Below are positions 1,050-45,353 of a stretch of DNA of 64,000 nt, piece by piece (position 1 is the first letter of the stretch; each line of letters begins with the position of its first letter). Position numbers and translations under genes: made by a program. This DNA is from Perkinsus chesapeaki ATCC PRA-425. Taxonomy: Eukaryota; Protista; Perkinsozoa. The notes beneath the pieces are model-generated. The model saw only the letters and a list, made by a program, of their open reading frames with translations. It was not told the origin of the DNA and searched no databases. The stretch is taken from NCBI GenBank assembly GCA_013115145.1, contig JAAPAO010000094.1, positions 1 through 64,000 of the forward strand, given 5' to 3'.

Positions 1050-4000
1050 ATGAAGCTTGCAGTTGTTATGGGGGCGTTAGTGACGTGCTTGGCTTGGCTG
1101 GTATCGACTCAGACCTCCGCTAGGGTAATGTTGACCTATTTCGTATCTTTTGAGACGCTCCTTTCTTCAGTCTGTATGGGCATCTCGCCAACAATTCCTA
1201 TCTGGTGATTCGGTTCCTGTGTCACCATCTCTCTCTACCACACTCAGCTCAGCAAATGCTCTCAACGCCGAAATCGGTGAGGTAAGCGTTCGCCCCTTTA
1301 GCCCGACGGTCTCCCATTGATCCCTCTCAGGAGGAAGTGTCCGCCTGGGTGTATGTCGTTGAGGTTGTCGTAGTGATAGTTTTATCACTGCTATTTGAAT
1401 ACGTAATAACGCTGCCCTTTGTGCCTGTTAAGTGTGTTTGTAGTAGGCCCAGGAGAGAGTAAGGGAGAAGCTAGAGGAAGAGGGCAAGGGTACGTTAGTG
1501 AGAATGATGGACACCCTTTTCCGTGAAATTATGATTCTCGGATTTATCGGCCTGTTTGTCTTCATTTGTAAGTTGAATCTCTCGGCAAGGAAATAACTGT
1601 TCTACATAAGGTACTAAGACCGGATTGGCAAAGGAGATTAGCAAGGCGGTAAGGAGGGAATGTCGTCACGCGCCGCGAAATTGGCTGGTGATTAGGTTAT
1701 TGGAGCTGCTGAGGAAGGTGGAGAGGATCCTCTAGCGGAGAGCTTTGAGTCTATCCACATGATATTATTCTGCGTAAGCTTTTGTTCATCGGGGAACCTG
1801 TGCGATACAGTCGATTCAGAGTCACCTCTTCCGTCTTTATTGGAGTACTCGTGTCTCGAATTTCACATCACGACGCTCAGTACCGAGTGAGAAATCGAGG
1901 AAATCCGAATTATTCTATTTTATTGCGCCGGGCGGCAGGGGGGGTCAGAAAGTTTACTTTTCTGAAAACCCTTCGACGAGGCGGATATTTTAATGGCTCG
2001 TAGCCCTCTGTAAAACTCTCCGGAGTGTCTTTCAATGGTGATAACCTCCGATCAGACATTCAAAGTCTAATACTTCAGAAGAATCTGTTTTAATGAAAGG
2101 TAAAATTAATTCTTTTATGCGGGAGGGATCACTGAGAAGGAAATAGAAGATGAAGTGATTATTCTTTTCAAAGAGATATAAATGGGGAATGTTCTATCAG
2201 TCACCCCAGCACAATAATATATATTGATATTACCTTTATATATAATTTTCTCTATCGGTTAGTGTAACTTGTTCTTTTGTAGATTTCTTTTAACTTCGGC
2301 GCCACCAGAACATACCCTTAGAATGTATTATAATATTAAATATGTTATATGTAGTAAGTGAGTTTTACCATTGTGTAGTGCTTCTGTACCGGTGACACTA
2401 TCCTTGTCACTGTAGGTCTCTTGAATAAGCTGATACTCGCACTATAATCGATTCCAGAATATATCTAAAGACGTAAACTTCAATGGCGAGCTTCCCAATA
2501 ATGTGGCCTAGATTATGTGGTTCCATTTTTCAGGTGATGGTTGTCTTCATTTTTCAATGCATCACTTTGATGCTTGGGGCAGAGCGTATCACCAGAAGGT
2601 GGGATACCTGGGAGGAGATGGCAGAGACAGGGCGGGAGACACACGTTGATGCTCGTCACAAATCCCTGGAGTAAGCCACGCCCTGGCAGTGGCGGACAGA
2701 TTTGGTCGGTAGGCGTCGACTGATTGATCGTGGATTCCTGGATGAGGAGGGAAAGGAAAAGGCCCTGTTGAAGTTTTCGGAGAACTGGGTAGGTCCGTGT
2801 TTTCGATTTCGGTTAGGGAGAAATGGCTAAGCTTCTAGACGGGCAAAGCAGTGTATTTATTGAACGAAGTAAAGAGTGTTGATTTATATAAGCGAAGCTC
2901 TCGCCAGTGTTTACCTTGAGAGCGATCTTTATTATGAATTACGGTATCTTTCGAATTCCAGGACTTTTGGAAGTCCGAAAAGGAGGCATTACGGTGGCCT
3001 CGGGTGTTGATATCGCTGAGTAGAGAGGCTTCACGCTTGGTCGGAAACGCTTGGTTGAAAGCATCAAATGGAGAACCTAATAAATCTCAGCTGCGAGTGA
3101 ATACTAGAGTCTAGCAAAGGCGAATCTGAGTTCGGAAGGGGTCCTGATGAATCTTGCGCGCTATAAAGAATATCCTCCAGTAGAGTATCTCAGTTGTCCT
3201 ACATCCTGCCTGACGAGCTTCGTGATATTGTAATTTGGCGTCTACTGCGCCATGAATTCCTCTTCCCTTCACACAGCCGTGGCCAGAAGCTCGCTCTTAC
3301 GTCCCAGGTGGGCATCGGAAGGAAAGTGGTCGTTGAGAATTCCGCTAGCAGATTGCTGAAGTCCGGGACCCTATTGTCTTCGATTTCGAACGTTACCTTA
3401 CTGAGAAGCTCGGAGAAGGATTTGTAGTAGCCTTCGAGGAGGCAGAGTCGGCACTGTTGCGCCCAGGTTGAGTTGGTTGAGGTCGATCTGGCTACATGGG
3501 TGGTAGCTGTTTTGTTCACCCCCTGCATCGCATGGGTGCGTAGAGGCATCATTGGGATATGTTAGTTTATAATGCTCAGATACTGTCTTACTCCACCGCT
3601 ATTCGTATCGCTATGATCTGTGCCTTCTCCTGGATCTTACTAATAGCTATGTTTGCCTTTTATGTGTGCCTTGGCTTGCCTAGGTCAGTTTTGATACACC
3701 TTTATTAGGTCCATATAACTAACGTTATGATCGCTCTCTCGCCAGTGGTGCCATCGAGAGCTGTGGTGCTCTTGCAGATGCTATCTGGTAACAAACAGGG
3801 GTTCTACCCGGGTTTTGGGTTTTGGGTTTTGGGTTTTCTAAAACTCTGCGATAGGTACATCATTGGCGGCGTTCCAGCGGCACTATCGATCCCCTGATCG
3901 ATTCTCCAGCAGGCGCCGATCGAGCCCGCCTGAGTCCCCTGATTATGTAGGGATGAAATAACGGTTTGAAATTTCATAAAGTGTCCTTAGTCTTCCGAGG

Positions 4001-6990
4001 AAGAGGACCTCACACAACCGCTGCTGAACGCCAAGTCAAGTAAGTGGAAACCTACTGCTCGAGTTTTACTGTTTTTCTATCAGAAATGTTCTCATGGGTT
4101 CCCCGGTTCCGGCAGCAGGAAGAATACTTCAAGCCTATCAATAGACGAAGCACCGTCATGAAAGTGATCTGCCAGCATCGACACAGGGTAGTACCAGTGA
4201 TGGGATCTTCCTCCCCGTTCGTGGCCAGGCTAACAGTAGCCTCACCAGCGTGATTGTAGCCTGTCTAGGTACTGCTTCTTAAGGTTATAGGTTCAAGTAG
4301 TTGAGTACTAGATAGCATATATGCCGGACTTAGGGGGACCGAGCGAGCCTAAAATTCTAGTGTTTCCAACTTTGCAGTGCGAAAAATGACTGGACATGAC
4401 CATAGGGGCGAGACTGTTGTTATCAGATTCCGAATGCCCAGGAGCGTCTAATGTGGTTTGAGGAATACTCCCTACCTGTATTCTCCCACATGCTTGAGAT
4501 TATGATGTTCTTCCAAGCGGTCCTTACAGCTACCCTTATAGTAAGCTGGGGGAGCTATTGGCAATGCGAGGGGGCTTCTCCTTTTACTAGAATAGATAGA
4601 ATACCCCATTGACTACAACGCGCAAACCAGATCACACTGTGCATGCGTACACCGAGACACAGAAGTATTCAGGACTACTCATGGATATCTGTAGTGACAT
4701 ATTTTGTGTCCGCTTCTGTGGAGCAATGCAAAGGGGATTCCGCAGTGGTACTATGAACTTTCGTTCATACTTGGCTGTATATCTCAACACTAGGAAAGCT
4801 TGTATATTTTCGGAGATAATGTTGATTGGATTATATTATATTGATCCTTGGCTCATCGGTGCTCGAGGAGAACCTTTACGAGAGTAAGGTAATGTCGTTT
4901 GCTCAGGTGCTGATTGCCATCGGGGGCCCTTCCCAGTGGTCGGTGTGGTCATGGCTGTGTTATTTCCTGTCTTGGGGGGAATGGGCCATTATGACCCGCT
5001 ATCTGGTAGTAAGGCTCCTCGGGATTTGTTCCACTTGCTTTCAATACTAGGTTTTAGGTTCCCCACGTGATGAGCCGTCTTACGTTGGTGACCAGTATAG
5101 AGTATTTGAAGGACCCAGAGTTGATAGAGAAGGTAGTACTGGGAGGCTTCCATCAACCTCTTCTCGGATGCTGAACTACTTGTATATTAATCCAGATCTG
5201 CTCTACCTGCCGCTGTATGGCGACTGTTGCTTGGAGTATCTTGGGTCCATATTTGGAGCATGAGTGAAGCGTCGGATAGCCAGTGGTATTGCCCACCCGA
5301 TAGATCTTATTCAAAAGCGTGCAATAAAGAGATAGTTTTACTTCGACAAGGTTGCATTCTGTCGACCGGCGCGTTTGTGTGGCAATCATCTCATCAGGTC
5401 ACATTCGAAGTCAAACGTGAGCGTCTTCTTCAAGCCTTGAAGGTTCTGTCGGTAGTGAAGCTCGAGGGTAAAGCCAGGCGTCTGGCAGCCGAGGGAGAGG
5501 ACACCATTTCTGATGAAGAGTGGGAGCGGACTCCGCCACGGGGTCAGGGTTTTTCGGTCAGGTATGAGGCAGCCTTGTATACCTTTGAGTCGCTGTCTGA
5601 GGAGGCGAAGGCTAAGATAGAATCCACTTTCGAGACATTCGATGCCGACCTCAGTGGCACTGTGGATTGCCAAGAGATGGAGGAGGTGAGAGCACATTGT
5701 GGTACGCTTTTACCTGGAAGTCTAAGAGTTTCAATGCGCGTTGGTGGGAAGTATGTTTAAAAGTCGGGTTATGGTAAGGTGGCCCGGCTATTTCGCAGCT
5801 TGTTTTCAACAGTGAAAATTTGTGCCACATATGAAGTTCTAGCTCCCTGTATGTAGGCAAGCCCAAGGGACCCCGCTGCTTTGTTCGTTCACGATCATAA
5901 ATCCACTCATTTACCTCGGTTCTAGTCGCGGTTCTAATCCGTCAGCTCCTCGTCTTTTTACGTCATTTCGAGAACCCCCTGTATATCCCCTTAATGGTTA
6001 GGTTATGGGTGCCATGGGTGTAGTACCAGGTAGCGAGGCTAGTAGATCGGCATGTGCATTGTTGAAGATGGTTGATAAGGATGGATCAGGACAGCTAGAT
6101 GAGGAGGAGTTTAAGGTCGGCAGGAGGACGAGGAATAGCCAACTTGAATGGCTCAATTTGCCACCATTATTTGCACTATATTAAGAACTTCTACATTACC
6201 TTCGATGATCTAGCGTGCATCGGTGAGCGAGGTTGACGGTGATCCTGCGGGTTGTTGTTTAGGTACTGATGGTCCTAGCGTTGGTGAAGCCAGACGAGGC
6301 GGAGGAAGCCGAAGATCTCAAAGCGTTCTTCCGGAAGATCGATGCGGATCAGAGCGGTAGACGGCTGACGGTTGGGATAGTGGTGAGTGTTGTGACAGGG
6401 TTGGTGTCCCTTGAGGAGTTAGCGGATGCATTTACAGAACTGGGTGTACCGATGAACACTGAGGAGGTTGGGAGATTGGTGTAAGTTGGAGGGATCCTAC
6501 CGATGAAGGAATACCGCGATGGTGAAGTATACCAGAAAGTTGCAAGTATACTAGACCTGAGAATTGGAGAAGATAGTCTACTTGGGGAAGCAGCAAACTA
6601 TCTATTGTTATATAACGTGTTGCTAGCATTCACTAAGTGCTGGTCTTGAAGGTAGATACTTGTCCTCGTCAACCGAGCAGGACAAATTGTAGAACTCGGT
6701 AAGATTTTGCAATCACCGAAAAAGCGCATTTGTTGCGACGATTCCGACGAAACTGCTCGAATGCTGAGCCTCATTTACGACTCGTTGTTCTAACACCGCA
6801 AGAGTTGTGGTATCACTAATAGCATCGAGGATCAGGTATGAGTGCTTCGGTCAAGTGAAGACCGAACTCGCCGAACCTGAATTTGTCAAGTGGATGCGTT
6901 TCCTCGATAACATGGACGATAAGAGGGAAGGAGGTGGGCTGGCGATGTGGTCATCATTTCCGGCAGTCCCCGGTTGGCAGGTCTTGAAAG
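1050..6990 (+). CDS. MLO-family multi-pass membrane protein with N-terminal signal peptide and C-terminal EF-hands (multi-exon)
   Basis: Spliced exons give MLO-like motifs in the expected order: VVVIVLSLLFEY, MDTLFREIMILGFIGLF, ESFESIHMILFC, ITRRWDTWEEM, VFDFERYLTEKLG, VELVEVDLATW, LMWFEEYSLPVFSHMLEIMMFFQA, VPHVMSRLTLVTSIEYLKD. EF-hand loops follow: DADLSGTVDCQE, DKDGSGQLDEEE, DADQSGLVSLEE, plus a degenerate fourth. The 3' end is approximate. Confidence 0.8.
3810..3837 (+). repeat. (GGGTTTT)4 telomere-like / G-quadruplex-competent repeat inside a short intron
   Basis: Four perfect GGGTTTT units within a ~66-nt GT-AG intron (about 3788-3853) of the MLO-like gene. Confidence 0.9.
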
Positions 6991-7524
6991 CACTTAATCG
7001 GCTCCTTAGTCGATATTCCTCCTATATAAATGTCACCTATAGCTCCCCTGAGTTTTCGGGCGCGCGCTTTTAACAGAAGCGTTTATTTCCTAATTGTTGA
7101 TTCGTAACTATGGGGATGACTCGTTTCATTTTTACTTCCCTCGTAGTTGCGTTATTCTCGCTGCTGAGGGGACGCTCGGTTGTGACGGACTATCGTTGCA
7201 GCCTGAGGGGGACAGTGTTACACAATTCCACTGCAGCGCCTTGAAGAGTGGATAGATAATGGTGCCGTTGAGGCGTAGGTTTGGTCGTTCTTAGTACAAG
7301 AAAGATAACACTTGTGGCATTTCCTGCGGAAGATACGCTATCGGGTTTTTTATATTCGCTAGGCTATGCAGGATTCCTCGGTTCTGTGACGTCGGCGCTG
7401 AGGCGCGTTCTTCTAGCGTGCGAGTAGCGTATAGCGCGTACTTGTGAGCGTTCGGGTTAAGTGTGGAGCATCACAGCTGTTAAGTGTTGTTAAGTTTCTT
7501 AAATACCGTTTAAACTAAATCATC

Positions 7525-9110
7525 ATGTCATCCTCTTCCACCGAGGATATGCTCGCTAAGGTTGGCGTGCGCGTTCCCTACACTTTGCTACCAGCTGATA
7601 AAGTCGACAAGACCAAGTGGGCAGTTATTGCTTGTGATCAGTAGGGCTATAGAACTCTGTTGAGTTGCTTTTATTCTTGTTTGTGTAGGTACACCAGCGA
7701 GCCTGACTACTGGGAGAGAGTTGACAAGTTCGTAGGAGATGCCCCCAGCACTTTGCGTTTAATTTTCCCTGAAGTTTATCTTGAGAAGGGTCGTGATGAG
7801 GAGGTAGGAGAATCCTTCTGTGGCTGGCGGTGAGTGCATCGATTTTTACTCAGATTATGAAGAGCATCTCAGATCACATGGCACAGTACACGGCTGAGGG
7901 CATTCTTGTGAAGCCCGAGAAGCCCGGTATGGTGTTGGTTTCGAGAACCACTAAAACTGGCGCCAAGCGGACTGGTTTGGTGACCGCTGTCGATTTGGAG
8001 AAGTACGACTACTCTGTCGGGAGCCAGAGCGAGATCCGTCCCACCGAAGCCACTATCGAGTCTAGGATTCCTCCGCGTTTGAGTAGGTTGCGCATGCGTG
8101 CAAATCCTAGAGTATCTTTGTTGTTTGATGGTCAGATATCCGTCGCAATGCTCCTGTGGAGCTGCCTCACATTATGGTGCTCATTGACGATCCGGAGAAG
8201 ACTGTTTTGGAGCCTCTCTTCGCCAAGAGGGATCAGCTCAAGCAAGTTTACGATTTCGATCTTATGGAGAACGGCGGGCATCTCACCGGCTGGTGGGTTG
8301 ACGGCGAGAGCTCCGAGAGCGAGGATTTGGCCAAGGCTTTGAATGTCATCGCCGAGCCCGAAAGATTCCATAAGAGGTACGAGGCCCCCGCCGACAAGAA
8401 GCCTCTTATCTTCGCTGTTGGTGATGGCAACCACTCGCTTGCTACTGCTAGAGCCTACTGGCAGGAGGTGAAGGCCACCCTTACTGATCCCGAGGAAATC
8501 GCTCATCATCCCGCTAGATTTGCCTTGGTTGAGATTGAGAATATCCACGATGAGGGTCTGGCCTTTGAGGCGATTCACAGGCTTATTTTCAACGCCAACG
8601 GAGGCAGCAGGAAGTTTATCACTGAAATGACTGAGTTCTTCGAGAAGGAAGGATGCGGCCCTGTGACCGTCAGCGAGACCGACGACGACTTCAAGAAGGC
8701 TGTCGAGGGCAAGTGCTCCGGTCATAGCTTTGGCTATATGGTCGATGGTGTTAAGGGAGGGGTGTTCATCGCTAACCCTAATAAGGTCCTTGATGTTGCC
8801 ACGGTGATGGACTTCGTGGATCCCTATATGAAGACCAATGAAGCTAACGGAACGAAGATCGATTACGTTCATGGATTGACTGCTATTGAAAGGTAAGGGT
8901 TTGCACGCATGCACAAGGTGATATCTTTTGTTCTCTAGATACTGCACTGCTGGCACTTCTAACGTTGGAATTGTTCTTCCCGATATGCACAAGTCGGATC
9001 TTTTCAAGACCGTTGTCCATGATGGTGCTCTACCTCGCAAGACCTTCAGCATGGGCGAGGCAGACGAGAAGCGCTTCTATTACGAGTGCCGTAGAATCCA
9101 AAAGGACTAA
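7525..9110 (+). CDS. DUF1015 family protein, bacterial type, with 4 introns
   Basis: Spliced product contains KWAVIACDQYTSEPDYW, PSTLRLIFPEVYL, TEATIESRIPPRL, ELPHIMVLIDD, FAVGDGNHSLATA and LPRKTFSMGEADEKRFYYECR. Introns at about 7641, 7804, 8085 and 8893. Confidence 0.85.
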
Positions 9111-10625
9111 ACCGACTGCTACCAGACTGTCTATCATCAATTATAATATTGTTAACTCTATATAACCTCAATCACCCAGAGGTCCCAAGCTCCGCTGGTC
9201 TCCCTCGAGATCGCAGAAGGCAACGGTTTTCAGCTAGTCTTCCGCAGCAGCTTTTGCGGAGTTTATCGAGTACTGTACTCCCTCCTCCTGGACGTAACGC
9301 TCCTATAGGCGTTTTTAAGTTGCTGATTGGCGGGCTGTAGCAACTGGTGTTGCTGTGGTCTCGTCTATGGTACTGTCCTTGTAGTCGGCGTAGAGTCGAA
9401 AATGTTTATTAATACTAAAACTGTTTCATGTGAGCACCTGTCGCACTTGTGTTGGCCAATTGTCCCTGAGGAGGTTTTCAGGGATTGTGTGCATGGAGCA
9501 GCAAGCGGTTTCATGGTAGTCACGTTGGTGAAGATCCTCATCGTATTCTCCCTCGCCACGAAAGCTCTATCAAGTTCTTGTCCAATGTTTCCTGATTGAC
9601 TGAAGCGCTTGTTATATATTATGTTGCATAATTCTTAGTAAACTCGGTTTTCTGTCGTCGGGAAGTTGCCCTGTCTCACCGGCTGTCTCATCAAAAATGT
9701 GCTCCCCTCTAGCAGGGCTTTGTATGTGCTAAATAAAGCGGTTGAGTCGCAAAGCGTGCAAGATACGATTATTAGTTTTTGTATCTTGCATACGGTAAGA
9801 TAGGCGTTGCGATGATGCATCTGCTGTACCGACTTTGCCGTCGATGAGGATGGTGGATACTTTTAACCAAAGGTTATCTTCCTCTCTCTTAGCGTCCTGT
9901 GTCTTCTGTGTGTTCAACTCGATATAATGTCTCACGCCAACAACAGTAACAGCAGTAGGAGTGCAGCAGCAGTTGCAGCAGCAGCTCATGACACTCATGC
10001 ACAGGATGGAGCGATAGGGTCGGTATTGGTGGCGGTTGTAGATCCGCAATAAATTACAGTAATTCTTACCGAGCATCTCTGTTGTAGCTAAGATACTTCG
10101 CCTTTGAAGGGTGCTCTTTCTGATGGCTCGAGCTACTACGTTTATCAGATAGTGTATAGTATATTCACAGCTTGTTTCATATCGGCCGCTCGTGCTTGTC
10201 GAAAATGCAGATAGGCGAAGTAGTTTTGAGGAATAATGCCATTTAGAACGGTCTTTTTCGTGGAATGTGAAACTCGAAATTGAAGAGAAAACAGACTACT
10301 GAGCGCCGTAAGCTTCATGAAAGATCGCAATAGGTCTGATAACTACGAGTCGGTACGTATTGTAGTATATTATTAACTTGGGCGCCCTAGTAAACCGTTG
10401 TTATCCAATAACGGGGAATTGGGGAACCAATTACCATCACCTGCATTCTCAATCCTTTTGAGAATATAGCCTTAGCCTTATACTATCTAATGAAATAAGA
10501 CTTGTTTCATTTAATAATTTGATAAGGTCTATTATATTCTGTCGTATGGGCAGGGAGCTTTGGCTTGGAAATGAAGTTTGAGGCGTGCCTTCGACAGATA
10601 CGCGGCCAACACCCCCTCGGTGGGC

Positions 10626-12682: not shown

Positions 12683-15110
12683 ATGTCGTCGGTCCTTGCC
12701 GGCATGGGCGATCTCGAGAGGAGGCTCACTCGCGTGGCGAATGGATGTCGGCAGATTAAGAGCTCGGACGGTGTTGAAGAGGCTAGTGTGAGTTGACGGT
12801 AGTGGCGGGGTGAGTCGAATGGTAGGTGGAGGGAAGCAAGGATAAATTTATTGGCATAAAAAGGGAGTTGGTGGTAGCGATGAGGATGTTGAAGGATGCT
12901 CTACAGCAGCGGAAAAAGGTAATGTTGTGGGCGAAAAGAAGGGAAACAGTAGAGGTTGAAGCAATGATGATAATTACCACGGCAGAGTAGATGGATAGTG
13001 AGATTTCTAGATATCTGAACTGAATGCGAGGTTTTGCAATACCACATAGAGTACCACCTAGTAGGTCGGCTTAAACGTTAAATGCTTGTCTCTGGCTAAT
13101 GGCGTCCTCACAGCCATTATAGCGGTATCGCTGTCGACTCTCGTTATGGTCATTCCTTGTTAAGCGCCAAATAAGCTCTTGGAGGCACGAGTGCCGTCGC
13201 CGTGTAGAGGGATGAGGTCCCGCAGTGGTTCGAGTTGGAATTGGTCAGGTATATCGAGATGGTAAAGGTGGCAGCAGCAACCCGGAGTATATTAAACTGA
13301 CAGTTCGAGCCAGGACTCTGTTGGAGCAATGCCGAGCTAGAACTAACGCTCTACGACAAGTAAGCTACCACTGACATGGGTGTAGGAGTGCGCTGGAGTC
13401 GCTGGAGTGTCTTGCCGGCCTATGGAGGTTAAGGGTTTCCGTGCATCTGTCGATCACTAGGCTTCACTGAATCATTGTCATATAGGTTTTGTTTAAATTA
13501 GTTCGTTTGACTTCAGGTCCTCCGGGAGCAATGTGCACATGCTAACTCTACTCGAGCGCGTCTGGGCACAAGACTGAGCCAACGAGAGCTGGACTGGAGG
13601 TGGGTGGGAAGAGTGGAGGCTCGGATTATGGCCAAGTCTAGGTACGATCAGCTGTCGGTGATAACAGAGTACACTGACCTTTGCTCGACCTGTATTAAGG
13701 AGCCTTCAAAGGTGCTCCTCGGGGAGGAAAAATTGTTCTTAATGCGGAAATTTTGCCAGAAAAGTTGTTCCTAGGCCAAAAGGAAACATAAAGTATACTC
13801 CTCCTGGCGATATTTGACGCTCCTCTTTGCCTCCCAGACTCCAAGCCGCGCCTCATCGGTTGGGTTGTTCTTTCTTGCGATGGAGGTGTAGGGTTTGATA
13901 CTGCAGGCTATTCCCGAGATACCACCGGATTTATCTGAAGCATCAACTGATGTTAGAAGTGCCCGAAGGAAGCTCTTCGATGGAGGGGAACAGAGAGTCT
14001 CGCCTATAAAGCGGGGCAGCGGGGTAAGTCTAGAATTTGGTCATCACCCCGGTGGTGCTAATACAGTATCATATAACCTATTGCATTATGATAATGTGAT
14101 ATAGTAGCAAACATTCATTATAGTAGGCTCAGGTATAGATCAGTAATACTGACTTAGTTTTTATGCAGCATAGTTTATCATAAATTATGTCTTAGGAGCA
14201 ATGGGAGGTGTCCCGGCCATCTCATCGTGTAGGAGAGCTGTCCGTTGGGGAAGAAGATGCTATGGAAGAGTGGACGGTTAAGATGGATGCGATTGATAAG
14301 GGTGGGTAAGGAGGTTATAGAGCTTAATAGAGTTATAGAGCTTAATAGAGTTATAGAGCTTAATAGAGTTATAGAGCTTAATAGAGTTATAGAGCTTAAT
14401 AGAGTNNNNNNNNNNNNNNNNNNNNNNNNNNNNNNNNNNNNNNNNNNNNNNNNNNNNNNNNNNNNNNNNNNNNNNNNNNNNNNNNNNNNNNNNNNNNNNN
14501 NNNGTTATAGAGCTCCGGCCGAATATTGCTTTCGAGCAGTCAGCATTGTCTGGAATTTAATAAGGAAAAAAATTACGAATAAGCTCAAGAATTTACACTT
14601 ACACCTAGAAGTGTAGCTAAGCTCGGCTTAGTTCTTGTGGACTGCTCGCTCTTCCCAGAGGTGGACGAGATAGACGTGATGGTTGATCGATTGAAGGAGA
14701 TAGCGTTGGAGATGGGGGAAGCTGGGAATAGGCATGCCGAATTGATAGAGAAAATCAAGGAGCGAAATGATAATGTTGACGGGGGTATACGGGTAAGTTG
14801 GTCTCTACCTTGCAGCTGGTCGATATCTCATCGAATTGGTGAAATACATGCGCCAGTCGATTCTGGCATTTCCAAACACTTTATGGTGAGAGAAAATCAT
14901 CGGCCGGAAAATTCATATTAAGAGCAAAGGTTTGGAAGGAAAACTGGGCATTGAGGGAAAGCGCTAGACAATTGGTGACTTTAGGCGGTGAGCGATAGAG
15001 TACGAAGTATCGTGATAACTGAAAACAAGAGCGCTATGACATGCCGCATCATCCTGGGCTTCGTGTTGCTGGTTATGATTGGTTGGATCTATTCAAGAGT
15101 CAAAGATTGA
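12683..15110 (+). CDS. Tail-anchored Qc-SNARE (SYP7/syntaxin-8-like)
   Basis: SNARE heptad EVDEIDVMVDRLKEIALEMGEAGNRHAELIEKIKERNDNVDGGIRAVSDRV followed by C-terminal TM MTCRIILGFVLLVMIGWIYSRVKD*. Upstream exons have GT-AG boundaries. The gene spans an N gap. Confidence 0.7.
14314..14514 (+). repeat. 18-bp minisatellite (GTTATAGAGCTTAATAGA)n running into a scaffold gap
   Basis: Five perfect units at 14314-14403, N run at 14406-14503, and a partial unit resuming at 14504. Lies in a SNARE intron. Confidence 0.9.
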
Positions 15111-20409: not shown

Positions 20410-23400
20410 ATGTCCGGTTCCGGAGCCCAGCCCAACGCTGCTCGATACGTGCTACCCGATAACATTGCTATTAGCGAGTATGCCATTCACCTCAAGCCCA
20501 ATTTCGACAACTTCCTCTTTCAAGGATCCTCAAAGATTTCACTTGCTGTGACGAGGCCCACGAAGACGATCAAGCTCAATGCTAAGGAACTCTCCATCGA
20601 CCCTAGCGTAGGCCCGTACGGGTGGGAGAGATTGGGCGTATGTGTTGTTGGTGCTCAGGTGACCTATACTCCCGTTGGTGGTTCACCTATCACAGCCTCA
20701 TCCGTTAGTGTGTCTAAGGCCGCTACGGAATGCACATTTGAGTTCCCCGAGGAACTTAAGGTTGGTGAGGGTGAATTAGCCATTGAGTATGTTGGAACAC
20801 TTAATGATCAAATGGCTGGTTTTTATAGATCTGGGTAATAATACAGTACAAGTGGATGATATATACTTTAATAGATACGTTGACCAATTTGGTAAAAATA
20901 AATATATGTTGAGCACCCAAATGGAGTCTATTGATGCTAGAAGGGCGTTCCCTTGTGTGGATGAACCCAACCGGAAGGCTGTGTTCAGAATCACCATCAC
21001 CACCGATGCCAGCTTGCAGGTTTGCACCCTCAGCTTCCATTGGGCTAATTGTTGGTAGGTTCTATCAAACATGCCCGAGGCCTCCCGTACTGTCTTCAAT
21101 GGCGGGTCAGCAGAGAATCCCGTGTCCTACCAGACCGTGGAGTTCATGCCTTCACCGAAGATGAGCTCCTATTTGGTCGCTTTCTGTGTTGGGCAGTTCG
21201 AGTTTGTCCAGGATACCACAAAGAACGGGACTCTGGTAGAGCTGGTATCTTCACTACTTCCGAAGATTCAAAACTGCTCAGGTTCGTGTCCTCTGCACGC
21301 CAGGCAAGCAATCTCAGTGCGGATATGCCTTGGAAGTTGCCACCAGAGTCCTCGCTTGGTAATCTCATACCGTCTAGCGCGCCACCTGGACCGCTCCTCA
21401 GGTACGAGGAATTCTTTGGGATTCCCTATCCGCTGCCGAAGCTCGATCTCATCGCTGTTCCTGATTTCGCCATGGGAGCCATGGAGAACTGGGGCCTGGT
21501 CACCTACAGGGAGATAGACCTGTTGTGCGACGTTGAAAAGGTAGCCTGCGGGCAACTTGATTGTATGTCATTCTTGTGTGTAGCTATCAACCAAGCGTCG
21601 TGCCCGTATTACCTCGACTGTTACCCATGAGCTGGCTCATCAGTGGTTCGGCAATCTTGTCACCATGGACTGGTGGGATGGCATCTGGCTCAACGAGAGC
21701 TTCGCTTCCTTCATGGAGAACTTGAGCGCCGATGCGCTTTACCCTGAGTTGGGCATGTGGAACACGTAATGAGATAGGCGGCTGTCGATTCCAAGTAGGT
21801 AGTGATACAACAGGTACATTCATCAGTTCTTCGAGGGCGGGCTGGAACTGGACAGTCTTCGCTCCAGCCACCCCATTGTGGTGCCCATCTATCACGCTGA
21901 GGAGGTCGATCAGGTAGGCTCCGGGCTGCGGGCGACTATGTAGAGGTTCGAGTTAGGTCTTTGACCATATCTCTTATGAGAAGGGATCGGCAGTAGTAAG
22001 GCAGCTGTGGGCGGTCCTTGGAGGCGACAAGTTCCAAGAGGGCGTGCGAAGGTATATGAACGCGCACATGTATGGCAACTCCGTAACAGAGGATCTGTGG
22101 GATGCCCTGGAGAAGGTAATGGTTTGAGGAGAAGTCGGTGGAGTCGGACTGGTGGGGTTTCGTGACAGGTATCTGGGCAACCAGTGAGGGAGATGATGGA
22201 CTCATGGACAGATCAGATGGGATATCCTTTATTAGAAGTTGGTCCACGTGATACAAATGGTAACTGTAAAGTTACTCAAAGTTGGTTCCTATCTGATGGG
22301 TCAATAAAGCCAGGAGATGATGATAAGAAATGGGTTGTACCGATACTTATTGGTGATGATAAAACACCGTCTAATGAAATGGGTAAATTAACTATGATGA
22401 GAGATAAGACACAAACCATTAATGTTGGCAATGGTAAATGGGCTTTGTTAAATTATGGTGCTTGGGTGCCGTATAGAGTTCATTACACTTCATCTGATGA
22501 ATATAATAAAATCCTCGCTGGTGTAACTGATAAGACTGTTCCCGTTCCCAATAGAGTTAACCTTTTGGGTGATATCTTTGCTTTAACCAAAGCTGGACGT
22601 GTTAGCCCTGAAGATGCTCCTCGAGTATCAAAGGCGTATAGCAACGAGACCGATGCAGATGTATGGGATGCTTTATCTAATCTTATCGGTGGACTTTCGA
22701 CTATCTGTACTGGTCTTGGTCGTACGGCTGAACTCGATAAGTTGGTATCTGATATGATCGCTCCTCAACTTAATAAAGTTGGTTGGGAAAGGAAGGCTGG
22801 CGAAAGTCCAAAGGATCGTCAGCTGAGAGCTTGCTTGGCTGGTTTGGCATCCCAACATTGTGCTTCCGATAAGTCACTCGCCACGAAATGTGCCGAAATG
22901 ACTCGGGCATTCCTTGAGGATAAGAGCTCCCTTGCTGAGGACGTTCGTGTTCCTGTGTTCCGATTAGCCTTGGCCGGCAGCGATCCTTCAGTTGGTGAGG
23001 AGTTGTGGAATGAGCTCATCAAGGTGGCCGAAACCTACGAGACCCCACAGGGCTGCCGGATGGATATTTACGTCAGTATTGGTTTCATTGCCAGCCCTGC
23101 CCTCAAGAAGCGCACCCTCGACATGTGCCTTACCAACTTCATCAAGCCTCAGGATTACTTCTACCCCATGGGCGGCGTCCGTATATCCAATCAAGAGGGA
23201 TCTGATATGACATGGAAGTGGCTCTTGACCAACATAGAGGCCTGCAAGGCTCGAGTGGCCACGGCCAGCTCCTCCCTGTTAGCTGGTGTGATGCTCAACT
23301 GCACCAGGAGAGGCCTCACCTACGACATGGCGGACAACGTGGAGAAGTTGGCCAGGGAGCACGACCTTGCCTCAGTAAGCCATCCCGCCGACCTTCCTCG

Positions 23401-24071: not shown

Positions 24072-27000
24072 ATGGCCACATCATCTCGCTATGTCTTACC
24101 GGACAACATCGATGTCCGCGAATACGACATTCATTTGAAGCCCAGCTTCGAGACCTTTCGCTTCCAGGGGACCTCCAAGATATCCTTGGCCGTCACCAAG
24201 CCTACAAGGGTCATCAAGCTGCATGCGAAGGAGCTTGCTATCGACCCTAAGGTGAGCTTGAGAGAATCTTGGTGGGACCTTTTGGCGTATCTGTTGTTGG
24301 TGCTCAGGTGACCTATACTCCAATTGGTAGTTCACCTATCACAGCCTCATCCGTTAGTGTGTCTAAGGCCGCTACGGAATGTACATTTGAGTTCCCCGAG
24401 GAACTTAAGGTTGGTGAGGGTGAATTAGCCATTGAGTATGTTGGAACACTTAATGATCAAATGGCTGGTTTTTATAGATCTGGGTAATAATACAGTACAA
24501 GTGGATGATATATACTTTAATAGATACGTTGACCAGTTTGGTAAAAATAAATATATGTTGAGCACCCAAATGGAGGCCATCGACGCCAGAAGGGCGTTCC
24601 CTTGTGTGGATGAACCAGAGCGCAAAGCTGTCTATAAGGTTACCATCACCACCGAGGCCAACCTCCAGGTGGGTCGCTACGGTCCCTACGTTTCTGAGAG
24701 GTTGATTATCTAGGTTATCTCTAACATGCCTGAGTCCTCTCGAACCATCTTCACCGTCGACAGCGGTGATGCCGCCAAAGCCTACCAGACCGTGTCGTTC
24801 ATGCCCTCCCCCAAAATGAGCTCCTATCTGGTTGCTTTCTGCGTGGGAGAATTCGAGTACGTCCAGGGGACTACCAAAAACGGCACTTTGGTGAGCTTTC
24901 AGTAACCCCGGTGGCCCCAGCAGAGCTCTTCTCAGGTTCGCGTCCTTTGTACTCCAGGCAAGCAAGCTCAGTGCACCTTCGCCTTGGACGTGGGCATTCG
25001 CTGCCTTGAATGGTACGGCGACGGCCCCTAGTGCTACAGTTTGACCTCAATACGTCAGGTACGAAGAGTTTTTCGGAATTCACTATCCTCTGCCTAAATT
25101 GGATATGATTGCTGTTCCCGATTTTGCCATGGGGGCCATGGAGAACTGGGGCCTGGTCACCTATAGGGAGATAGACCTCTTGTGCGACGCCGATAAGGTA
25201 GACCGAGCTCCCTTGTGTGTTTGTGGAAGCTGCCCTCAGGTTTCTGTAAATCGTCGCGCCAGACTGGCCACTGTTGTCACCCATGAGCTAGCCCATCAAT
25301 GGTTCGGCAATCTTGTTACCATGGAGTGGTGGGATGGCATCTGGCTTAATGAAGGCTTCGCTACCTTCATGCAGTATGCCTCCGCTGAAGCCCTTTTCCC
25401 CGACTGGGGCGTTTGGAACTCGTAAGCCGCCTGAGCCAATTCTCTTGTGACTGCCAACCTCAGGTACATCCACGAATCTTTCGAGCGCGCCTTGGCCTTG
25501 GATGGCCTTCGGTCAAGCCATCCTATTGTGGTCCCGATCCACAAGGCTGAGGAGGTCGAGCAGGTAAGCTGAAGGATGGCGCGGTTTCACAAGTTGCCTG
25601 TTGGTAGGTTTTCGATGCCATTTCCTACATGAAGGGCTCAGCAGCGGTACGGCAGTTGTTCGCCGTGGTCGGTGCTGAGAAGTTCCGTGATGGAGTTCGC
25701 CATTATATGAAGACTCACCAGTATGGGAACTCGGTTACAGATGATCTGTGGAGAGCTTTGGAGGAGGTAGTCTGAGGAGCGGTCGTAGAGCACAACGGGT
25801 TTGGTCAGGTATCTGGGCAACCGGTGAAGGAAATGATGGACTCATGGACAGATCAGATGGGATATCCTTTATTAGAAGTTGGTCCACGTGATACAAATGG
25901 TAACTGTAAAGTTACTCAAAGTTGGTTCCTATCTGATGGGTCAATAAAGCCAGGAGATGATGATAAGAAATGGGTTGTACCGATACTTATTGGTGATGAT
26001 AAAACATCATCTAATGAAATGGGTAAATTAACTATGATGAGAGATAAGACACAAACCATTAATGTTGGCAATGGTAAATGGGCTTTGTTAAATTATTGTG
26101 CTTGGGTGCCGTATAGAGTTCATTACACTTCATCTGATGAATATAATAAAATCCTCGCTGGTGTAACTGATAAGACTGTTCCCGTTCCCAATAGAGTTAA
26201 CCTTTTGGGTGATATCTTTGCTTTAACCAAAGCTGGACGTGTTAGCCCTGAAGATGCTCCTCGAGTATTAAAGGCGTATAGCAACGAGACCGATGCGGAT
26301 GTATGGGATGCTTTATCTAATCTTATCGGTGGACTTTCGACTATCTGTACTGGTCTTGGTCGTACGGCTGAACTCGATAAGTTGGTATCTGATATGATCG
26401 CTCCTCAACTTAATAAAGTTGGTTGGGAAAGGAAGGCTGGCGAAAGTCCAAAGGATCGTCAGCTGAGAGCTTGCTTGGCTGGTTTGGCATCCCAACATTG
26501 TGCTTCCGATAAGTCACTCGCCACGAAATGTGCCGAAATGACTCGGGCTTTCTTGGAAAATCCCGACGCCCTCGCCGACGATGTTCGTGTTCCTGTGTTC
26601 CGATTAGCCTTGGCCGGCAGCGATCCTTCAGTTGGTGAGGAGTTGTGGAATGAGCTCATCAAGGTGGCCGAAAGATACGAGACCCCACAGGGCTGCCGGA
26701 TGGACATTTATTTGAGCATCGGCTATATTGCCAGCCCTGCCCTTAAGAAGCGCACCCTCGACAAGTGCCTTACTAATTTCATCAAGCCTCAGGACTTCTT
26801 CTACCCCATGGGCGCGGTTCGAACCTCAACCGTTGAAGCGGGCGATTTGACCTGGCAGTGGCTGTTGTCGAATTTCGATGCCTGTCGATCTCGAGTGGCC
26901 ACCGCCAGTCCTTCCTTGCTCGCTGCAGTCGTGTCCAGCTGCGCGAGAGGCTCAGTTACCTATGAGATGGCCGACAATGTAGAGAAGCTGGCCAGCGATA

Positions 27001-42174: not shown

Positions 42175-43736
42175 TTAGAGACTATGGATAAGCTGCTTAG
42201 TCTCCTTATATGCCATACCAGCAAGCATTACTGCACTGATACCAAGTGCAATAGGAAGAAGTACGAAAACTGCACCCCAACTTAACACCTGTGCGATGGC
42301 AGTTACTAGCAGTTGCATCAGAGCTGCCCCAGCAGCGCCCATACCGTCTATTATTCCTGAGACTTGGCCCACTGCCTTCTTGGGCATCTTATGGCCGAGA
42401 TCGGCGCAGACAGCACTGGACAAGACATTGGATACTGAGCCCACCAGGAACCCACAGGCGAAGACTGTAGTGGACAAATAGGCTGTCGAGGGATGGTCGA
42501 CACGCAGCATAGCAATTGGTATGATAGCCAATATTAAGAATGCAAACATTGGAGGTGCTCGACAAGAGTCACCACATTTAGCTGTACAATAATCAGATAT
42601 AATACCTAATACGAGAGTACCAAATATAACACCCAAATTAAATAACATATCATATCCATTTGCTTCAGCTGATGTCCTACCAACATGTTCAGTTAAATAT
42701 AACGGTAACCAAANNNNNNNNNNNNNNNNNNNNNNNNNNNNNNNNNNNNNNNNNNNNNNNNNNNNNNNNNNNNNNNNNNNNNNNNNNNNNNNNNNNNNNN
42801 NNNNNNNNNNNNNAATAACATATCATATCCATTTGCTTCAGCTGATGTCCTACCAACATGTTCAGTTAAATATAACGGTAACCAAAAGAACATTGCGTAA
42901 TTCACGCCCTTTATACAAGCATAAGAGAAAGAATAACGGAGGACACCCGGAGCCCTCCAAGCAGCGAAAAAGTCAAGCCTATCGCTGTCGGCGTTTTCCC
43001 TGGCTTCGGTTTCTGCCCCTCCGTTTGCTGGGTTCAAAGGCTCCTGTAATGGATCGTCGGAGTGTATGGAAAGCCCAACTGATTGAGGGTCTCTTGGTAG
43101 GAAGTATAGCATACCAGCAGATACCACAACAAGTACTATTGCTGGTCCAAAGAACTGCCATGGTACCGATGCTTTATTACCAAATAATTCAATCATTAAA
43201 GTGCACATAGCAGCCCCCAGAATGTTACCAACGTTCGAGTCATTAGACCAAATGCCGAAGACCGTACCATAGTACTTGGGCAGGAAATACTGCCCGACTA
43301 TCAGAATCCCTGCCGGCCAGCAACCGGACTGGAAGACTGCATTGATGACCCACAGGAAGTAGTAGAAGTAATACCATCCACCCTCAGTTGCAGTGGCGAC
43401 CATTGAACCAAATATGAATTGAGTTATACAGCAGAGCGTCGTCATTAGAAAGAAGATCCTTACCGGATGGTAGAGGTCCCCTAATGGACCAGTAAAGAAC
43501 ATACCGATAGCATAGAACAACATAAATAATGTATTCATAACACCAAAGAAGGTAGTAGAGTACCCATAATATTCCTTCATATTAGGGGTCGCATTTGAGA
43601 AGGCCTTTCTCACTGCATGCAGACAAACATAGGTCAGAAATGTCCATAAGAATGCCGACGCTTGGTAGTATCGCTTGCTGTGCCGAACGCCCGATGACGA
43701 CGGCCGTTGCATCAACTTTGGATCCTGTTGAGTCAT
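42175..43736 (-). CDS. MFS sugar-phosphate/glycerol-3-phosphate transporter (SLC37/GlpT/OPA family), copy B, intronless, interrupted by a probably false gap
   Basis: HAVRKAF, FFTGPLGD, FQSGCWP, SNVGNILG, KGVNYAMFFWLP, SGIIDGMG. ORFs 42693-43736 and 42175-42648 join if the 73-bp duplicated gap flank is collapsed. Confidence 0.88.
42714..42813. other. Scaffold gap (100 N) with identical 73-bp flanks
   Basis: 42641-42713 is identical to 42814-42886. Confidence 0.95.
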
Positions 43737-43853
43737 GTAATGAACTACGAGTGAGTATCTTCCGCTATCTTAGAAGGTACAGAGGAATTCAACGCTGTGT
43801 TGGGAGTAAGATGAAACGCATATTCTCCACAAAAAAGGACAATTTCGACTGTA

Positions 43854-45353
43854 CTAAAACTGCTTGATGAGATCCCTGGTCTCCTCGTAGGCAACCCTGG
43901 TCAGAGCTACTGCACTCAATGCCAAGGCGATCGGCAATACAATGAACACATCACCCCAGTTTAAATACTGTGCAATCAGCATCACTAGCAGTTGCATCAG
44001 CGCCGCCCCGACAGCGCCCATACCGTCTATTATTCCTGAGACTTGAGCCACTGCCTTCTTGGGCATCTTATGGCCGAGATCAGCACAGACTACACTGGAG
44101 AGGACATTCGCCACGGAGCCTACCAGGAAACCACAGACGAAGACTGTGATAGCTAAGTACAGGGAAGATGGGTTGCTCGCACGCAGCATAGCAATTGGTA
44201 TGATAGCCAATATTAAGAATGCAAACATTGGAGGTGCTCGACAAGAGTCACCACATTTAGCTGTACAATAATCAGATATAATACCTAATACGAGAGTACC
44301 AAATATAACACCCAAATTGAATAACATATCATATCCATTTGCTTCAGCTGATGTCCTACCAACATGTTCAGTTAAATATAACGGTAACCAAAAGAACATT
44401 GCGTAATTCACGCCAGAAATACACGCGAAACAGAACGAGTACATAATAACACCGGGAGCCCTCCAAGCTGCGAGTAAGTCCAGCTCATCATCAGCGGCAA
44501 CATCTACCCTTGTAGCCGGCGATTCCTGGCCGTGGCCAACCTCTGAGGTGGTGAAAGACACTCCCCTATCGGAATTCAAAGGCTCCTGTAATGGATCGTC
44601 GGAGTGTATGGAAAGCCCAACTGATTGAGGGTCTCTTGGTAGGAAGTATAGCATACCAGCAGATACCACAACAAGTACTATTGCTGGTCCAAAGAACTGC
44701 CATGGTACCGATGCTTTATTACCAAATAATTCAATCATTAAAGTGCACATAGCAGCCCCCAGAATGTTACCAACGTTGGCATTATTAGACCAAACGCCGA
44801 AGACCGTACCATAGTACTTGGGCAGGAAATACTGGCTCACAATTACCACGGATGCCGGCCAGCATCCGGACTGGAAAACTGCATTGATTGCCCATAGGAT
44901 ATAGTAGAGGTAATACCACCCACTTTGAGTTGCAGTGTCGACCATGGAACCAAATACAAACTGCGTGATGCAACAAAGAACGCTCATTAGGAAGTAAACC
45001 ATTACCGGATGGTAGAGGTCCCCTAATGGACCAGTAAAGAACATACCGATAGCATAGAACAACATAAATAATGTATTCATAACACCAAAGAAGGTAGTAG
45101 AGTACCCATAATATTCCTTCATATTAGGAGTTGCATTAGTGAAGGCCTTCCTCACTGCATGCAGGCAGGCGTATGTCAGGAATGTCCATAACAGCACAGA
45201 CACCTGATAGTAACGCTTGCTGTGCCGGGCACTGGTGGTGGATGATGACTTTGACGATAAGAGTGTCATTACCAACAACAGATACCAAAACTGTAATGAG
45301 CAATGGAACATACCATGGACGAACCAATCATGGATAAATCGCGGTACACCCAT
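43854..45353 (-). CDS. MFS sugar-phosphate/glycerol-3-phosphate transporter (SLC37/GlpT/OPA family), copy A, intronless
   Basis: Uninterrupted 499-aa ORF with about 12 hydrophobic segments and the same motifs as copy B. The true start may be the downstream MTLLSSK. Confidence 0.92.
   Translation of the reverse strand: MGVPRFIHDWFVHGMFHCSLQFWYLLLVMTLLSSKSSSTTSARHSKRYYQVSVLLWTFLTYACLHAVRKAFTNATPNMKEYYGYSTTFFGVMNTLFMLFYAIGMFFTGPLGDLYHPVMVYFLMSVLCCITQFVFGSMVDTATQSGWYYLYYILWAINAVFQSGCWPASVVIVSQYFLPKYYGTVFGVWSNNANVGNILGAAMCTLMIELFGNKASVPWQFFGPAIVLVVVSAGMLYFLPRDPQSVGLSIHSDDPLQEPLNSDRGVSFTTSEVGHGQESPATRVDVAADDELDLLAAWRAPGVIMYSFCFACISGVNYAMFFWLPLYLTEHVGRTSAEANGYDMLFNLGVIFGTLVLGIISDYCTAKCGDSCRAPPMFAFLILAIIPIAMLRASNPSSLYLAITVFVCGFLVGSVANVLSSVVCADLGHKMPKKAVAQVSGIIDGMGAVGAALMQLLVMLIAQYLNWGDVFIVLPIALALSAVALTRVAYEETRDLIKQF

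What the first reader, a model, noticed from the sequence alone, without database searches (positions are those of the whole stretch)
42500..45130. Independent replicate: shared blocks between the two SLC37-like transporters are also AT-shifted
Seen: three blocks are near-identical between copy B and copy A (~42500-42908 vs ~44180-44414; ~43035-43235 vs ~44578-44778; ~43460-43590 vs ~45002-45128). Sampled 60-mers inside two of them are 28-32% GC (44281-44340, 43501-43560), while diverged segments between them are 47-57% GC (43321-43380, 43681-43740, 44461-44520). Inference: the same pattern in an unrelated family on the opposite strand argues for a general mechanism rather than a quirk of one protein family.
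Basis: partly seen in the sequence, partly recalled or inferred. Interest (0 to 1): 0.75.

Follow-up and report, generated by a model that had tools for sequence, protein, structure and literature searches.

The report
AT-shifted gene-conversion blocks in twin transporters
Two neighbouring sugar-phosphate transporter genes of a Perkinsus parasite keep three stretches identical by copying from each other, and in those stretches the silent codon positions have swung towards A/T, the opposite of what gene conversion does to base composition in the organisms studied so far.

Summary
Two tandem SLC37-type MFS genes on the minus strand (A 43854-45269, B 42175-43736) share three blocks of 127, 203 and 235 nt with one difference in 561 nt (dS 0.008). 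The rest of the genes is 73% identical (dS 1.18).

GC3 is 0.28 inside the blocks (0.19 in the largest) and 0.51-0.56 outside (Fisher p 1e-8), so amino-acid composition does not explain the low GC.

The N gap is a false gap. The same 73-mer sits on both sides; removing the Ns and one 73-mer gives an in-frame B gene colinear with A.

The blocks are not assembly chimeras. The adjacent P. olseni orthologues are homogenised in the same blocks and carry their own species-specific residues.

The pattern recurs in the aminopeptidase array of this window, intron included, and in a third MFS family that I found on other contigs.

RIP signatures are absent.

Best reading: recurrent interparalog gene conversion whose outcome is biased towards A/T. 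Recombination-linked mutagenesis is the main rival.

Orthologue DNA could not be fetched, so the synonymous changes in this pair are not polarised.

The scan noted the same effect earlier on other DNA of this genome (s1-230248, s1-225874).

The parts
43854..45269 (-). Copy A: SLC37-type MFS transporter gene, 471 codons plus stop. The open frame runs upstream to 45353, but the orthologues and the public gene model start at the Met at 45269.
   Evidence: ORF; Pfam MFS_1 E 1e-40; best solved relative is SLC37A2, E 9e-40; the public model P0001 is 100% identical.
42175..43736 (-). Copy B: the paralogous transporter gene, interrupted in the scaffold by the N gap. It is 462 codons once the gap and one duplicated 73-mer are removed.
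   Evidence: Both halves are B-type in the orthologue comparison.
42714..42813 (.). Assembly gap (100 N), most likely false: two contig ends overlap inside the repeated block.
   Evidence: Identical 73-mers at 42641-42713 and 42814-42886. The left contig runs exactly 73 nt past the only A/B difference in the block (42640). The collapsed sequence is in frame and colinear with A.
45002..45128 (-). Block T1 in copy A (127 nt, identical to B 43460-43586); GC 0.37, GC3 0.37.
   Evidence: Exactly two copies in the assembly.
43460..43586 (-). Block T1 in copy B.
44575..44777 (-). Block T2 in copy A (203 nt, identical to B 43033-43235); GC 0.43, GC3 0.32. It includes a species-variable loop.
   Evidence: Exactly two copies in the assembly.
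43033..43235 (-). Block T2 in copy B.
44180..44414 (-). Block T3 in copy A (235 nt, one synonymous difference from B at 44319); GC 0.37, GC3 0.19, falling to 0.05-0.10 in the centre.
   Evidence: Exactly two copies in the assembly.
42501..42908 (-). Block T3 in copy B as written in the scaffold: 42501-42713, the gap, then 42814-42908, of which 42814-42886 repeats 42641-42713.
44012..44081 (-). High-identity stretch in copy A (two 34-nt exact runs, matching B 42333-42402) that is not AT-shifted (GC3 0.54) and keeps the A/B type-specific residues.
   Evidence: Unexplained; possibly short or rare conversion patches.

Best explanation
The two genes are an old tandem pair of SLC37-type sugar-phosphate/phosphate exchangers. 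The A and B types already existed before the Perkinsus species compared here split. Three blocks of the pair are kept identical by recurrent interlocus gene conversion, while the segments between them, which carry type-specific residues, diverge freely. This part is shown. Within the recurrently converted blocks a DNA-level bias towards A/T operates. It has pushed synonymous sites below both the rest of the genes and the local non-coding composition, most strongly in the centre of each block, where conversion events overlap most often. This part is also shown. The inferred mechanism is that conversion itself is biased. Either mismatches in the heteroduplex are resolved in favour of A/T, or the more G/C-rich copy is more often the broken recipient. 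New A/T variants arising in either copy are then preferentially spread to the other, and new G/C variants are preferentially erased. Even a small bias per event becomes a strong directional force when events are frequent.
For: Conversion: in the 187 tract columns PcA/PcB differ at 0 residues and the adjacent P. olseni pair at 1, while the two species differ at 14-15. Outside the tracts PcA/PcB differ at 72 of 237 columns, and the tree groups sequences by paralogue type with support 0.99-1.0. dS is 0.008 inside and 1.18 outside, and the identical runs exceed every one of 10,000 shuffles. AT shift: GC3 is 0.28 against 0.51-0.56, p 1e-8, with V-shaped minima in the block centres. Not a property of the protein positions: distant paralogues show no GC3 dip in the homologous blocks. 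Not codon selection: the intron inside the shared aminopeptidase block has GC 0.25, against about 0.6 in unconverted copies. Below the neutral baseline: non-ORF DNA of the window has GC 0.46. One fully AT-biased round would give GC3 of only 0.37, so the process must be recurrent. Not deamination alone: in the neighbouring array the tract-sharing copies differ from the unconverted copies by 49 S>W against 16 W>S changes, compared with about 44:50 in control segments, and one third of the S>W class are transversions, as in the background. Generality: a third family (C10/C62/C2318) has a 30-codon near-identical block with GC3 0.11-0.18 against 0.40-0.51 elsewhere. In a reverse scan, the lowest-GC3 60-codon windows within this 64-kb window are the shared blocks.
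Against: No orthologue DNA could be obtained, so synonymous changes in this pair are not polarised. The transition/transversion evidence comes from the neighbouring array, at near-saturated divergence. Of the 10 tract amino-acid changes specific to this species, about half are S>W (three V>I and P>S), and I>V, I>L(CTC) and E>Q go another way. That fits general acceleration as well as it fits a pure AT drive. A 70-nt high-identity stretch (A 44012-44081) is not AT-shifted. Five diverged tandem MFS genes on C36 have low GC3 with no present identity, so some regional or expression-linked cause of low GC3 also exists in this genome. Whether the homogenised P. olseni blocks are AT-shifted is unknown.
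Confidence: 0.5

Rival explanations
1. Recombination-associated mutagenesis. Each conversion exposes single-stranded DNA and uses error-prone repair synthesis. The blocks therefore receive a large excess of ordinary, S>W-skewed mutations, which are then homogenised without any bias in conversion itself.
For: Amino-acid evolution in the blocks is faster in this lineage (10 changes against 0 in P. olseni, p 0.002; outside the blocks 42:23), and the changes are not all towards A/T. The S>W excess in the neighbouring array has the same transition:transversion mix as the background. GC3 is lowest in the block centres.
Against: A higher mutation rate alone changes how fast equilibrium composition is reached, not what it is (standard population-genetic reasoning, not tested here). 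The blocks lie well below the window's non-coding GC of 0.46. The P. olseni blocks are also homogenised but show no protein acceleration, so conversion in itself is not visibly mutagenic there.
Confidence: 0.25
2. A RIP-like genome defence: a homology-dependent cytosine-to-thymine mutator that recognises duplicated DNA.
For: The shift is confined to duplicated, near-identical DNA and is directed towards A/T.
Against: RIP indices in the blocks are near background: TpA/ApT 0.95 against 0.85-0.90, and (CpA+TpG)/(ApC+GpT) 1.19 against 1.35, with CpA and TpG still over-represented. One third of the S>W differences in the neighbouring array are transversions. The genes stay intact and the copies stay identical rather than diverging. 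The only C5-methyltransferase-like gene found in the assembly is DNMT2-like.
Confidence: 0.05
3. Both copies were overwritten by a third, AT-rich donor: another paralogue, an introgressed allele, or a copy hidden in the gap.
For: The gap at 42714-42813 lies inside a repeated block and could in principle hide another gene unit.
Against: Each of the three blocks has exactly two copies in the 41.7-Mb assembly. The next paralogues are only about 40% identical in protein. The graded, centre-lowest GC3 profile and the recurrence in three families do not fit single donor events.
Confidence: 0.05
4. Reverse causation or selection: the blocks were AT-rich first and conversion prefers AT-rich DNA, or A/T-ending codons are selected there.
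For: The same blocks are homogenised in P. olseni, so something conserved fixes where the tracts lie.
Against: Homologous blocks in distant paralogues and in the unconverted aminopeptidase copies (GC 0.53-0.57 at the same columns) are not AT-rich. An intron is shifted too. Tract position is more simply explained by strong protein conservation keeping enough identity for conversion to act.
Confidence: 0.08
5. Assembly artefact: collapsed or chimeric repeat nodes were placed into both copies.
For: A contig break and a false gap lie inside block T3, so a few true differences between the copies could have been lost.
Against: No assembly process creates synonymous A/T codons that preserve the protein. 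An independent assembly of another species shows the same paralogue identity in the same blocks. The open frames are intact.
Confidence: 0.03

Closest known systems
Mosaic concerted evolution of duplicated genes by interlocus gene conversion, with GC-biased gene conversion (e.g. mammalian histones, Hsp70, and the pairs BMP8A/B, DDX19A/B and TUBG1/2; PMC2720389)
   Same: Old paralogues whose homogenised blocks are flanked by divergent segments. Paralogues are closer within a species than orthologues are between species. Base composition in the tracts is shifted at third codon positions and in introns.
   Different: The direction is reversed. PMC2720389 states that converted regions characteristically have elevated GC and GC3. 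Here GC3 falls from about 0.55 to 0.19-0.37.
AT-biased gene conversion proposed for organelle genomes (tobacco plastid, Khakhlova and Bock 2006 as cited in PMC4524490; listed for yeast mitochondrial genomes, PMC7846184, from the search result only)
   Same: A conversion outcome that favours A/T.
   Different: Those cases are organellar and are described as exceptional (PMC4524490). This case is nuclear, lies between tandem protein-coding paralogues, and is visible as sharp sub-genic GC3 troughs.
Repeat-induced point mutation (RIP) of fungi
   Same: Acts only on duplicated DNA and drives G:C to A:T.
   Different: No CpA>TpA context, transversions are present, the copies stay identical and functional, no RID-type methyltransferase was found, and the organism is an alveolate.

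Membership tests
Interlocus gene conversion / concerted evolution | Within the tracts paralogues are closer within a species than orthologues are between species; outside the tracts sequences group by paralogue type. | tested here: met
   Tracts: PcA/PcB 0 differences, PoA/PoB 1, Pc/Po 14-15. Outside: PcA/PcB 72, PcB/PoB 37. Partition trees are discordant with support 0.91-1.0.
Interlocus gene conversion / concerted evolution | Identical fragments significantly longer than the distribution of variable sites allows (GENECONV-type test). | tested here: met
   Runs of 203, 139+95 and 127 nt, against a maximum of 93 in 10,000 column shuffles; dS 0.008 against 1.18.
Interlocus gene conversion / concerted evolution | Stable copy number and arrangement, arguing against unequal crossing-over with gene turnover. 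| tested here: met
   Adjacent A-type and B-type genes in P. olseni (FOZ61_002917/002916 and FOZ60_000148/000149). Two copies of each block in this assembly. A unit hidden in the gap cannot be excluded.
GC-biased gene conversion (gBGC) | Converted tracts are enriched in G/C at synonymous and intronic sites. | tested here: not met
   GC3 0.28 against 0.51-0.56; shared intron GC 0.25 against about 0.6. The sign is reversed.
RIP (repeat-induced point mutation) | C>T in a CpA context: TpA/ApT high and (CpA+TpG)/(ApC+GpT) low. | tested here: not met
   0.95 and 1.19 in the blocks, against 0.85-0.90 and 1.35 outside; observed/expected for CpA and TpG stays above 1.
RIP (repeat-induced point mutation) | Almost exclusively transitions. 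| tested here: not met
   In the neighbouring array, 17 of 49 S>W differences are transversions. This could not be tested in the MFS pair itself.
RIP (repeat-induced point mutation) | A RID/Masc1-type C5-DNA methyltransferase in the genome. | tested here: inconclusive
   A single PF00145 match, whose best solved relatives are DNMT2/tRNA-C38 methyltransferases. The six-frame search scores only the best candidates.
SLC37 / organophosphate:phosphate antiporter branch of the MFS | MFS_1 fold with closest similarity to SLC37 or GlpT-type exchangers. | tested here: met
   PF07690 E 1e-40; best PDB match SLC37A2, E 9e-40 over residues 59-463; the P. marinus orthologues are named glycerol-3-phosphate transporter by their source. 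The substrate was not tested.

The most novel reading that the evidence does not exclude
This Perkinsus lineage has acquired a reversed (A/T-favouring) bias in homologous-recombination repair. Every stretch that paralogues keep exchanging is driven to A/T and evolves faster even at the protein level, while P. olseni converts the same blocks without this effect. That would be a natural, lineage-specific switch in the sign of biased gene conversion in a nuclear genome.
Probability: 0.4. Interest if true: 0.8.

Novelty: new variant of a known kind. Interest (0 to 1): 0.62.

Why it matters
GC-biased gene conversion is treated as a near-universal force on eukaryotic nuclear base composition, and elevated GC3 is even used as supporting evidence for conversion (PMC2720389). 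A nuclear genome in which conversion tracts are pushed the other way would show that the sign of the bias can evolve. It would also offer a way to find what sets the bias, by comparing repair genes and mismatch handling between this species and P. olseni, which converts the same blocks. Two practical warnings follow. Composition-based tests for conversion can fail here. Tandem gene families in this parasite may also accumulate rare A/T-ending codons and extra amino-acid changes for non-adaptive reasons.

Tried and rejected
The single metagenome scan returned only relatives of 33% identity or less. The genome has no relatives in the genome search. Synonymous changes in the MFS pair therefore could not be polarised.

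2. A wider genome sample, to count more paralogue pairs. Only about 107 kb beyond the window was available.

3. The C3 tandem MFS pair. It has no nucleotide-level identity, so it is not informative.

4. Amino-acid composition as the cause. Rejected by GC3 and by the per-amino-acid codon tables.

5. Position-specific codon preference. Rejected by the paralogue control (block indices there were 2 codons off, which is negligible).

6. CpG-methylation decay. The observed/expected CpG ratio is 0.56 inside against 0.66 outside, too small a difference to explain a halving of GC3.

7. Strand-asymmetric deamination. The purine fraction at fourfold sites, tallied by hand from the codon table, is 0.45 inside and 0.475 outside, so there is no asymmetry.

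8. The first version of the partition table had a 2-codon offset. It was corrected.

9. The genome paper for this assembly was not in the paper library, so the assembly method is unknown. The species name comes from earlier notes only.
Full report
WHAT IS THERE

The region holds two tandem genes on the minus strand. Copy A is an open frame at 43854-45353; orthologues and the public model P0001 start at the Met at 45269, giving 471 codons. Copy B lies at 42175-43736. Both are MFS_1 proteins (PF07690, E 1e-40). Their best solved relative is the glucose-6-phosphate exchanger SLC37A2 (E 9e-40), so "SLC37-like" is a fair name.

The nearest proteins in public data are from Perkinsus olseni (75-81% identity) and P. 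marinus. Earlier notes of this scan call the genome P. chesapeaki. I did not verify the species name.

THE GAP

The 100 Ns at 42714-42813 are flanked by the same 73-mer (42641-42713 and 42814-42886), which occurs once in copy A at 44320-44392. As written, the scaffold adds 173 nt and breaks the frame. With the Ns and one 73-mer removed, B is an open 462-codon frame, colinear with A without indels through the block.

The left contig ends exactly 73 nt after the only A/B difference in that block (42640). That is the behaviour of a k-mer assembler at a repeat. I read it as a false gap caused by overlapping contig ends. A further gene unit hidden in the gap cannot be excluded without reads, although both halves of B are B-type.

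- Codon alignment gives three blocks of 127, 203 and 235 nt with a single synonymous difference in 561 nt.
- dS is 0.008 in the blocks and 1.18 outside. Nucleotide identity is 99.8% against 72.8%. The longest identical run in 10,000 column shuffles was 93 nt.
- Each block has exactly two copies in the 41.7-Mb assembly.
- GC3 without Met/Trp is 0.28 in the blocks and 0.56 (A) or 0.51 (B) outside (p 1e-8 and 7e-7). By block it is 0.37, 0.32 and 0.19.
- GC1 and GC2 barely differ, so amino-acid composition is not the cause.
- GC3 is lowest in the centre of each block, down to 0.05-0.10 in T3, and returns to about 0.55 at the edges.

THE BLOCKS ARE GENE-CONVERSION TRACTS, NOT CHIMERAS

P. olseni has the same tandem pair. 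FOZ61_002917 (A-type, P0011) and FOZ61_002916 (B-type, P0003) are adjacent on one 55-kb contig, as are FOZ60_000148/149.

Amino-acid differences by partition:

| Comparison | 187 tract columns | 237 columns outside |
|---|---|---|
| PcA vs PcB | 0 | 72 |
| PoA vs PoB | 1 | 68 |
| PmA vs PmB | 16 | 75 |
| Pc vs Po | 14-15 | PcA/PoA 51; PcB/PoB 37 |

- The tract tree pairs the paralogues of this genome and of P. olseni by species.
- The outside tree groups all B-types against the A-types with support 0.99-1.0.
- The duplication therefore predates the species, and the same three blocks have been homogenised independently, after speciation, in at least two lineages. In P. marinus they have not been homogenised recently.

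An independent assembly of another species showing the same blocks rules out an assembly artefact as the source of the identity.

THE AT SHIFT IS A DNA-LEVEL EFFECT TIED TO SHARED BLOCKS

1. Three distant paralogues in the same genome (contigs C62, C2318, C10; about 40% identity) show no GC3 dip in the homologous blocks.
2. In the four-copy aminopeptidase array of this window, the copies that share a block have GC 0.30-0.46 where the unconverted copies have 0.53-0.57 at the same alignment columns. The intron inside the c1/c2 block (20835-20874 = 24484-24523) has GC 0.25, against about 0.6 in c3 and c4. This excludes codon-usage selection.
3. I found a third case. The C10/C62/C2318 MFS subfamily shares a near-identical core of about 95 nt. 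Its 30 codons have GC3 0.11-0.18, against 0.40-0.51 elsewhere in the genes (p 6e-4 to 3e-3). It lies at a different position of the protein from T1-T3.
4. A blind scan of 60-codon windows in long ORFs found that the lowest-GC3 windows within this 64-kb window are the shared blocks of the two families.
5. Non-ORF DNA of the window has GC 0.46, so the blocks are pushed below the local non-coding composition rather than relaxing to it.

MECHANISM

Conversion must be recurrent and ongoing. If every S/W conflict between diverged copies were resolved to W once, GC3 would be 0.37, not 0.19. Mutations arising after the last event would make the copies differ, and they do not.

A RIP-like process is not supported:
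- RIP indices are near background.
- The genes are intact.
- The only C5-methyltransferase-like gene found is DNMT2-like.
- In the aminopeptidase tracts the excess of S>W over W>S differences against unconverted copies is 49:16, compared with about 44:50 in control segments. It contains one third transversions, the same mix as the background.

That pattern fits a process indifferent to the kind of S/W mismatch. I therefore favour conversion biased towards A/T, either at mismatch resolution or through preferential breakage of the more G/C-rich copy.

The main rival is recombination-linked mutagenesis. It is supported by faster protein evolution of the blocks in this lineage: 10 lineage-specific changes against 0 in P. 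olseni (p 0.002), compared with 42:23 outside (Fisher p 0.026). Only about half of those changes are S>W.

P. olseni converts the same blocks without that acceleration. This suggests the extra force is specific to this lineage, but its DNA could not be examined.

CAVEATS

The synonymous changes of this pair are therefore not polarised, and the sample of families is small.
- A 70-nt high-identity stretch (A 44012-44081) keeps type-specific residues and is not AT-shifted.
- Five diverged tandem MFS genes on C36 have whole-gene GC3 of 0.26-0.33 without present identity. Low GC3 therefore has at least one other cause in this genome, or else records an older phase of the same process.

COMPARISON WITH WHAT IS KNOWN

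Mosaic concerted evolution of old gene pairs is well known, and converted regions are described as characteristically GC-enriched at third positions and in introns (PMC2720389). AT-biased conversion has been proposed only for organelles and is described as exceptional (PMC4524490). A search for Perkinsus together with gene conversion returned no title or abstract on the subject.

I class this as a new variant of a known kind. The scan had already noted the same effect on other DNA of this genome (s1-230248, s1-225874). This report confirms an independent replicate. It adds the P. olseni/P. marinus protein contrast, the resolution of the gap and a further family.

Noticed in passing
G000:C36:5001-15000 (L048), ORFs at 633-2141, 2223-3749, 4018-5619, 5995-7542 and 7815-9395 of the locus, minus strand: Five tandem MFS paralogues, 40-49% identical in protein with no nucleotide-level identity, all have whole-gene GC3 of 0.26-0.33, where most other long ORFs in the sample have 0.40-0.63. 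The related gene on C2995 has GC3 0.33. This could be an AT-rich region or the old end-state of the same AT drive.
   Followed up: partly
L046 (C10:1-400 and 2300-2700), L047 (C62:1250-1650), L054 (C2318:25890-26290): A second MFS subfamily, spread over short contigs that look like a broken tandem array, shares a near-identical core of about 95 nt. Its 30 codons have GC3 0.11-0.18, against 0.40-0.51 elsewhere in the genes.
   Followed up: yes
window 44012-44081 (copy A) and 42333-42402 (copy B): Two 34-nt exact runs are separated by conserved A/B type-specific residues (AVAQ/AVGQ, GAVGAA/GAAGAA). Identity is high but GC3 is 0.54, so this stretch is not AT-shifted. It may reflect short or rare conversion patches held in check by selection.
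   Followed up: partly
window 14406-14503: A second assembly gap (98 N) in the window. It was not examined.
   Followed up: no
proteins P0004 and P0006 (P. marinus or a close relative): A third paralogue type: its N-terminal half differs from both the A and B types, and its C-terminal half is identical to P. marinus B-type (P0004) or is A-type-like (P0006). This suggests larger recombinant copies or chimeric gene models in P. marinus.
   Followed up: no
L056 (C138:412-1386, minus strand): The only C5-cytosine-methyltransferase-like gene found in the assembly. Its best solved relatives are DNMT2/tRNA-C38 methyltransferases.
   Followed up: partly
L054 (C2318:29161-29802, minus strand): A 214-codon open frame with GC3 0.17 and GC1 0.37, the most AT-rich long ORF in the sample. 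Its identity was not checked.
   Followed up: no
G000:C3437:76379-76803 (L052/L053): A short tandem repeat array, with self-matches of 95-99% at offsets of about 32 nt and its multiples.
   Followed up: no
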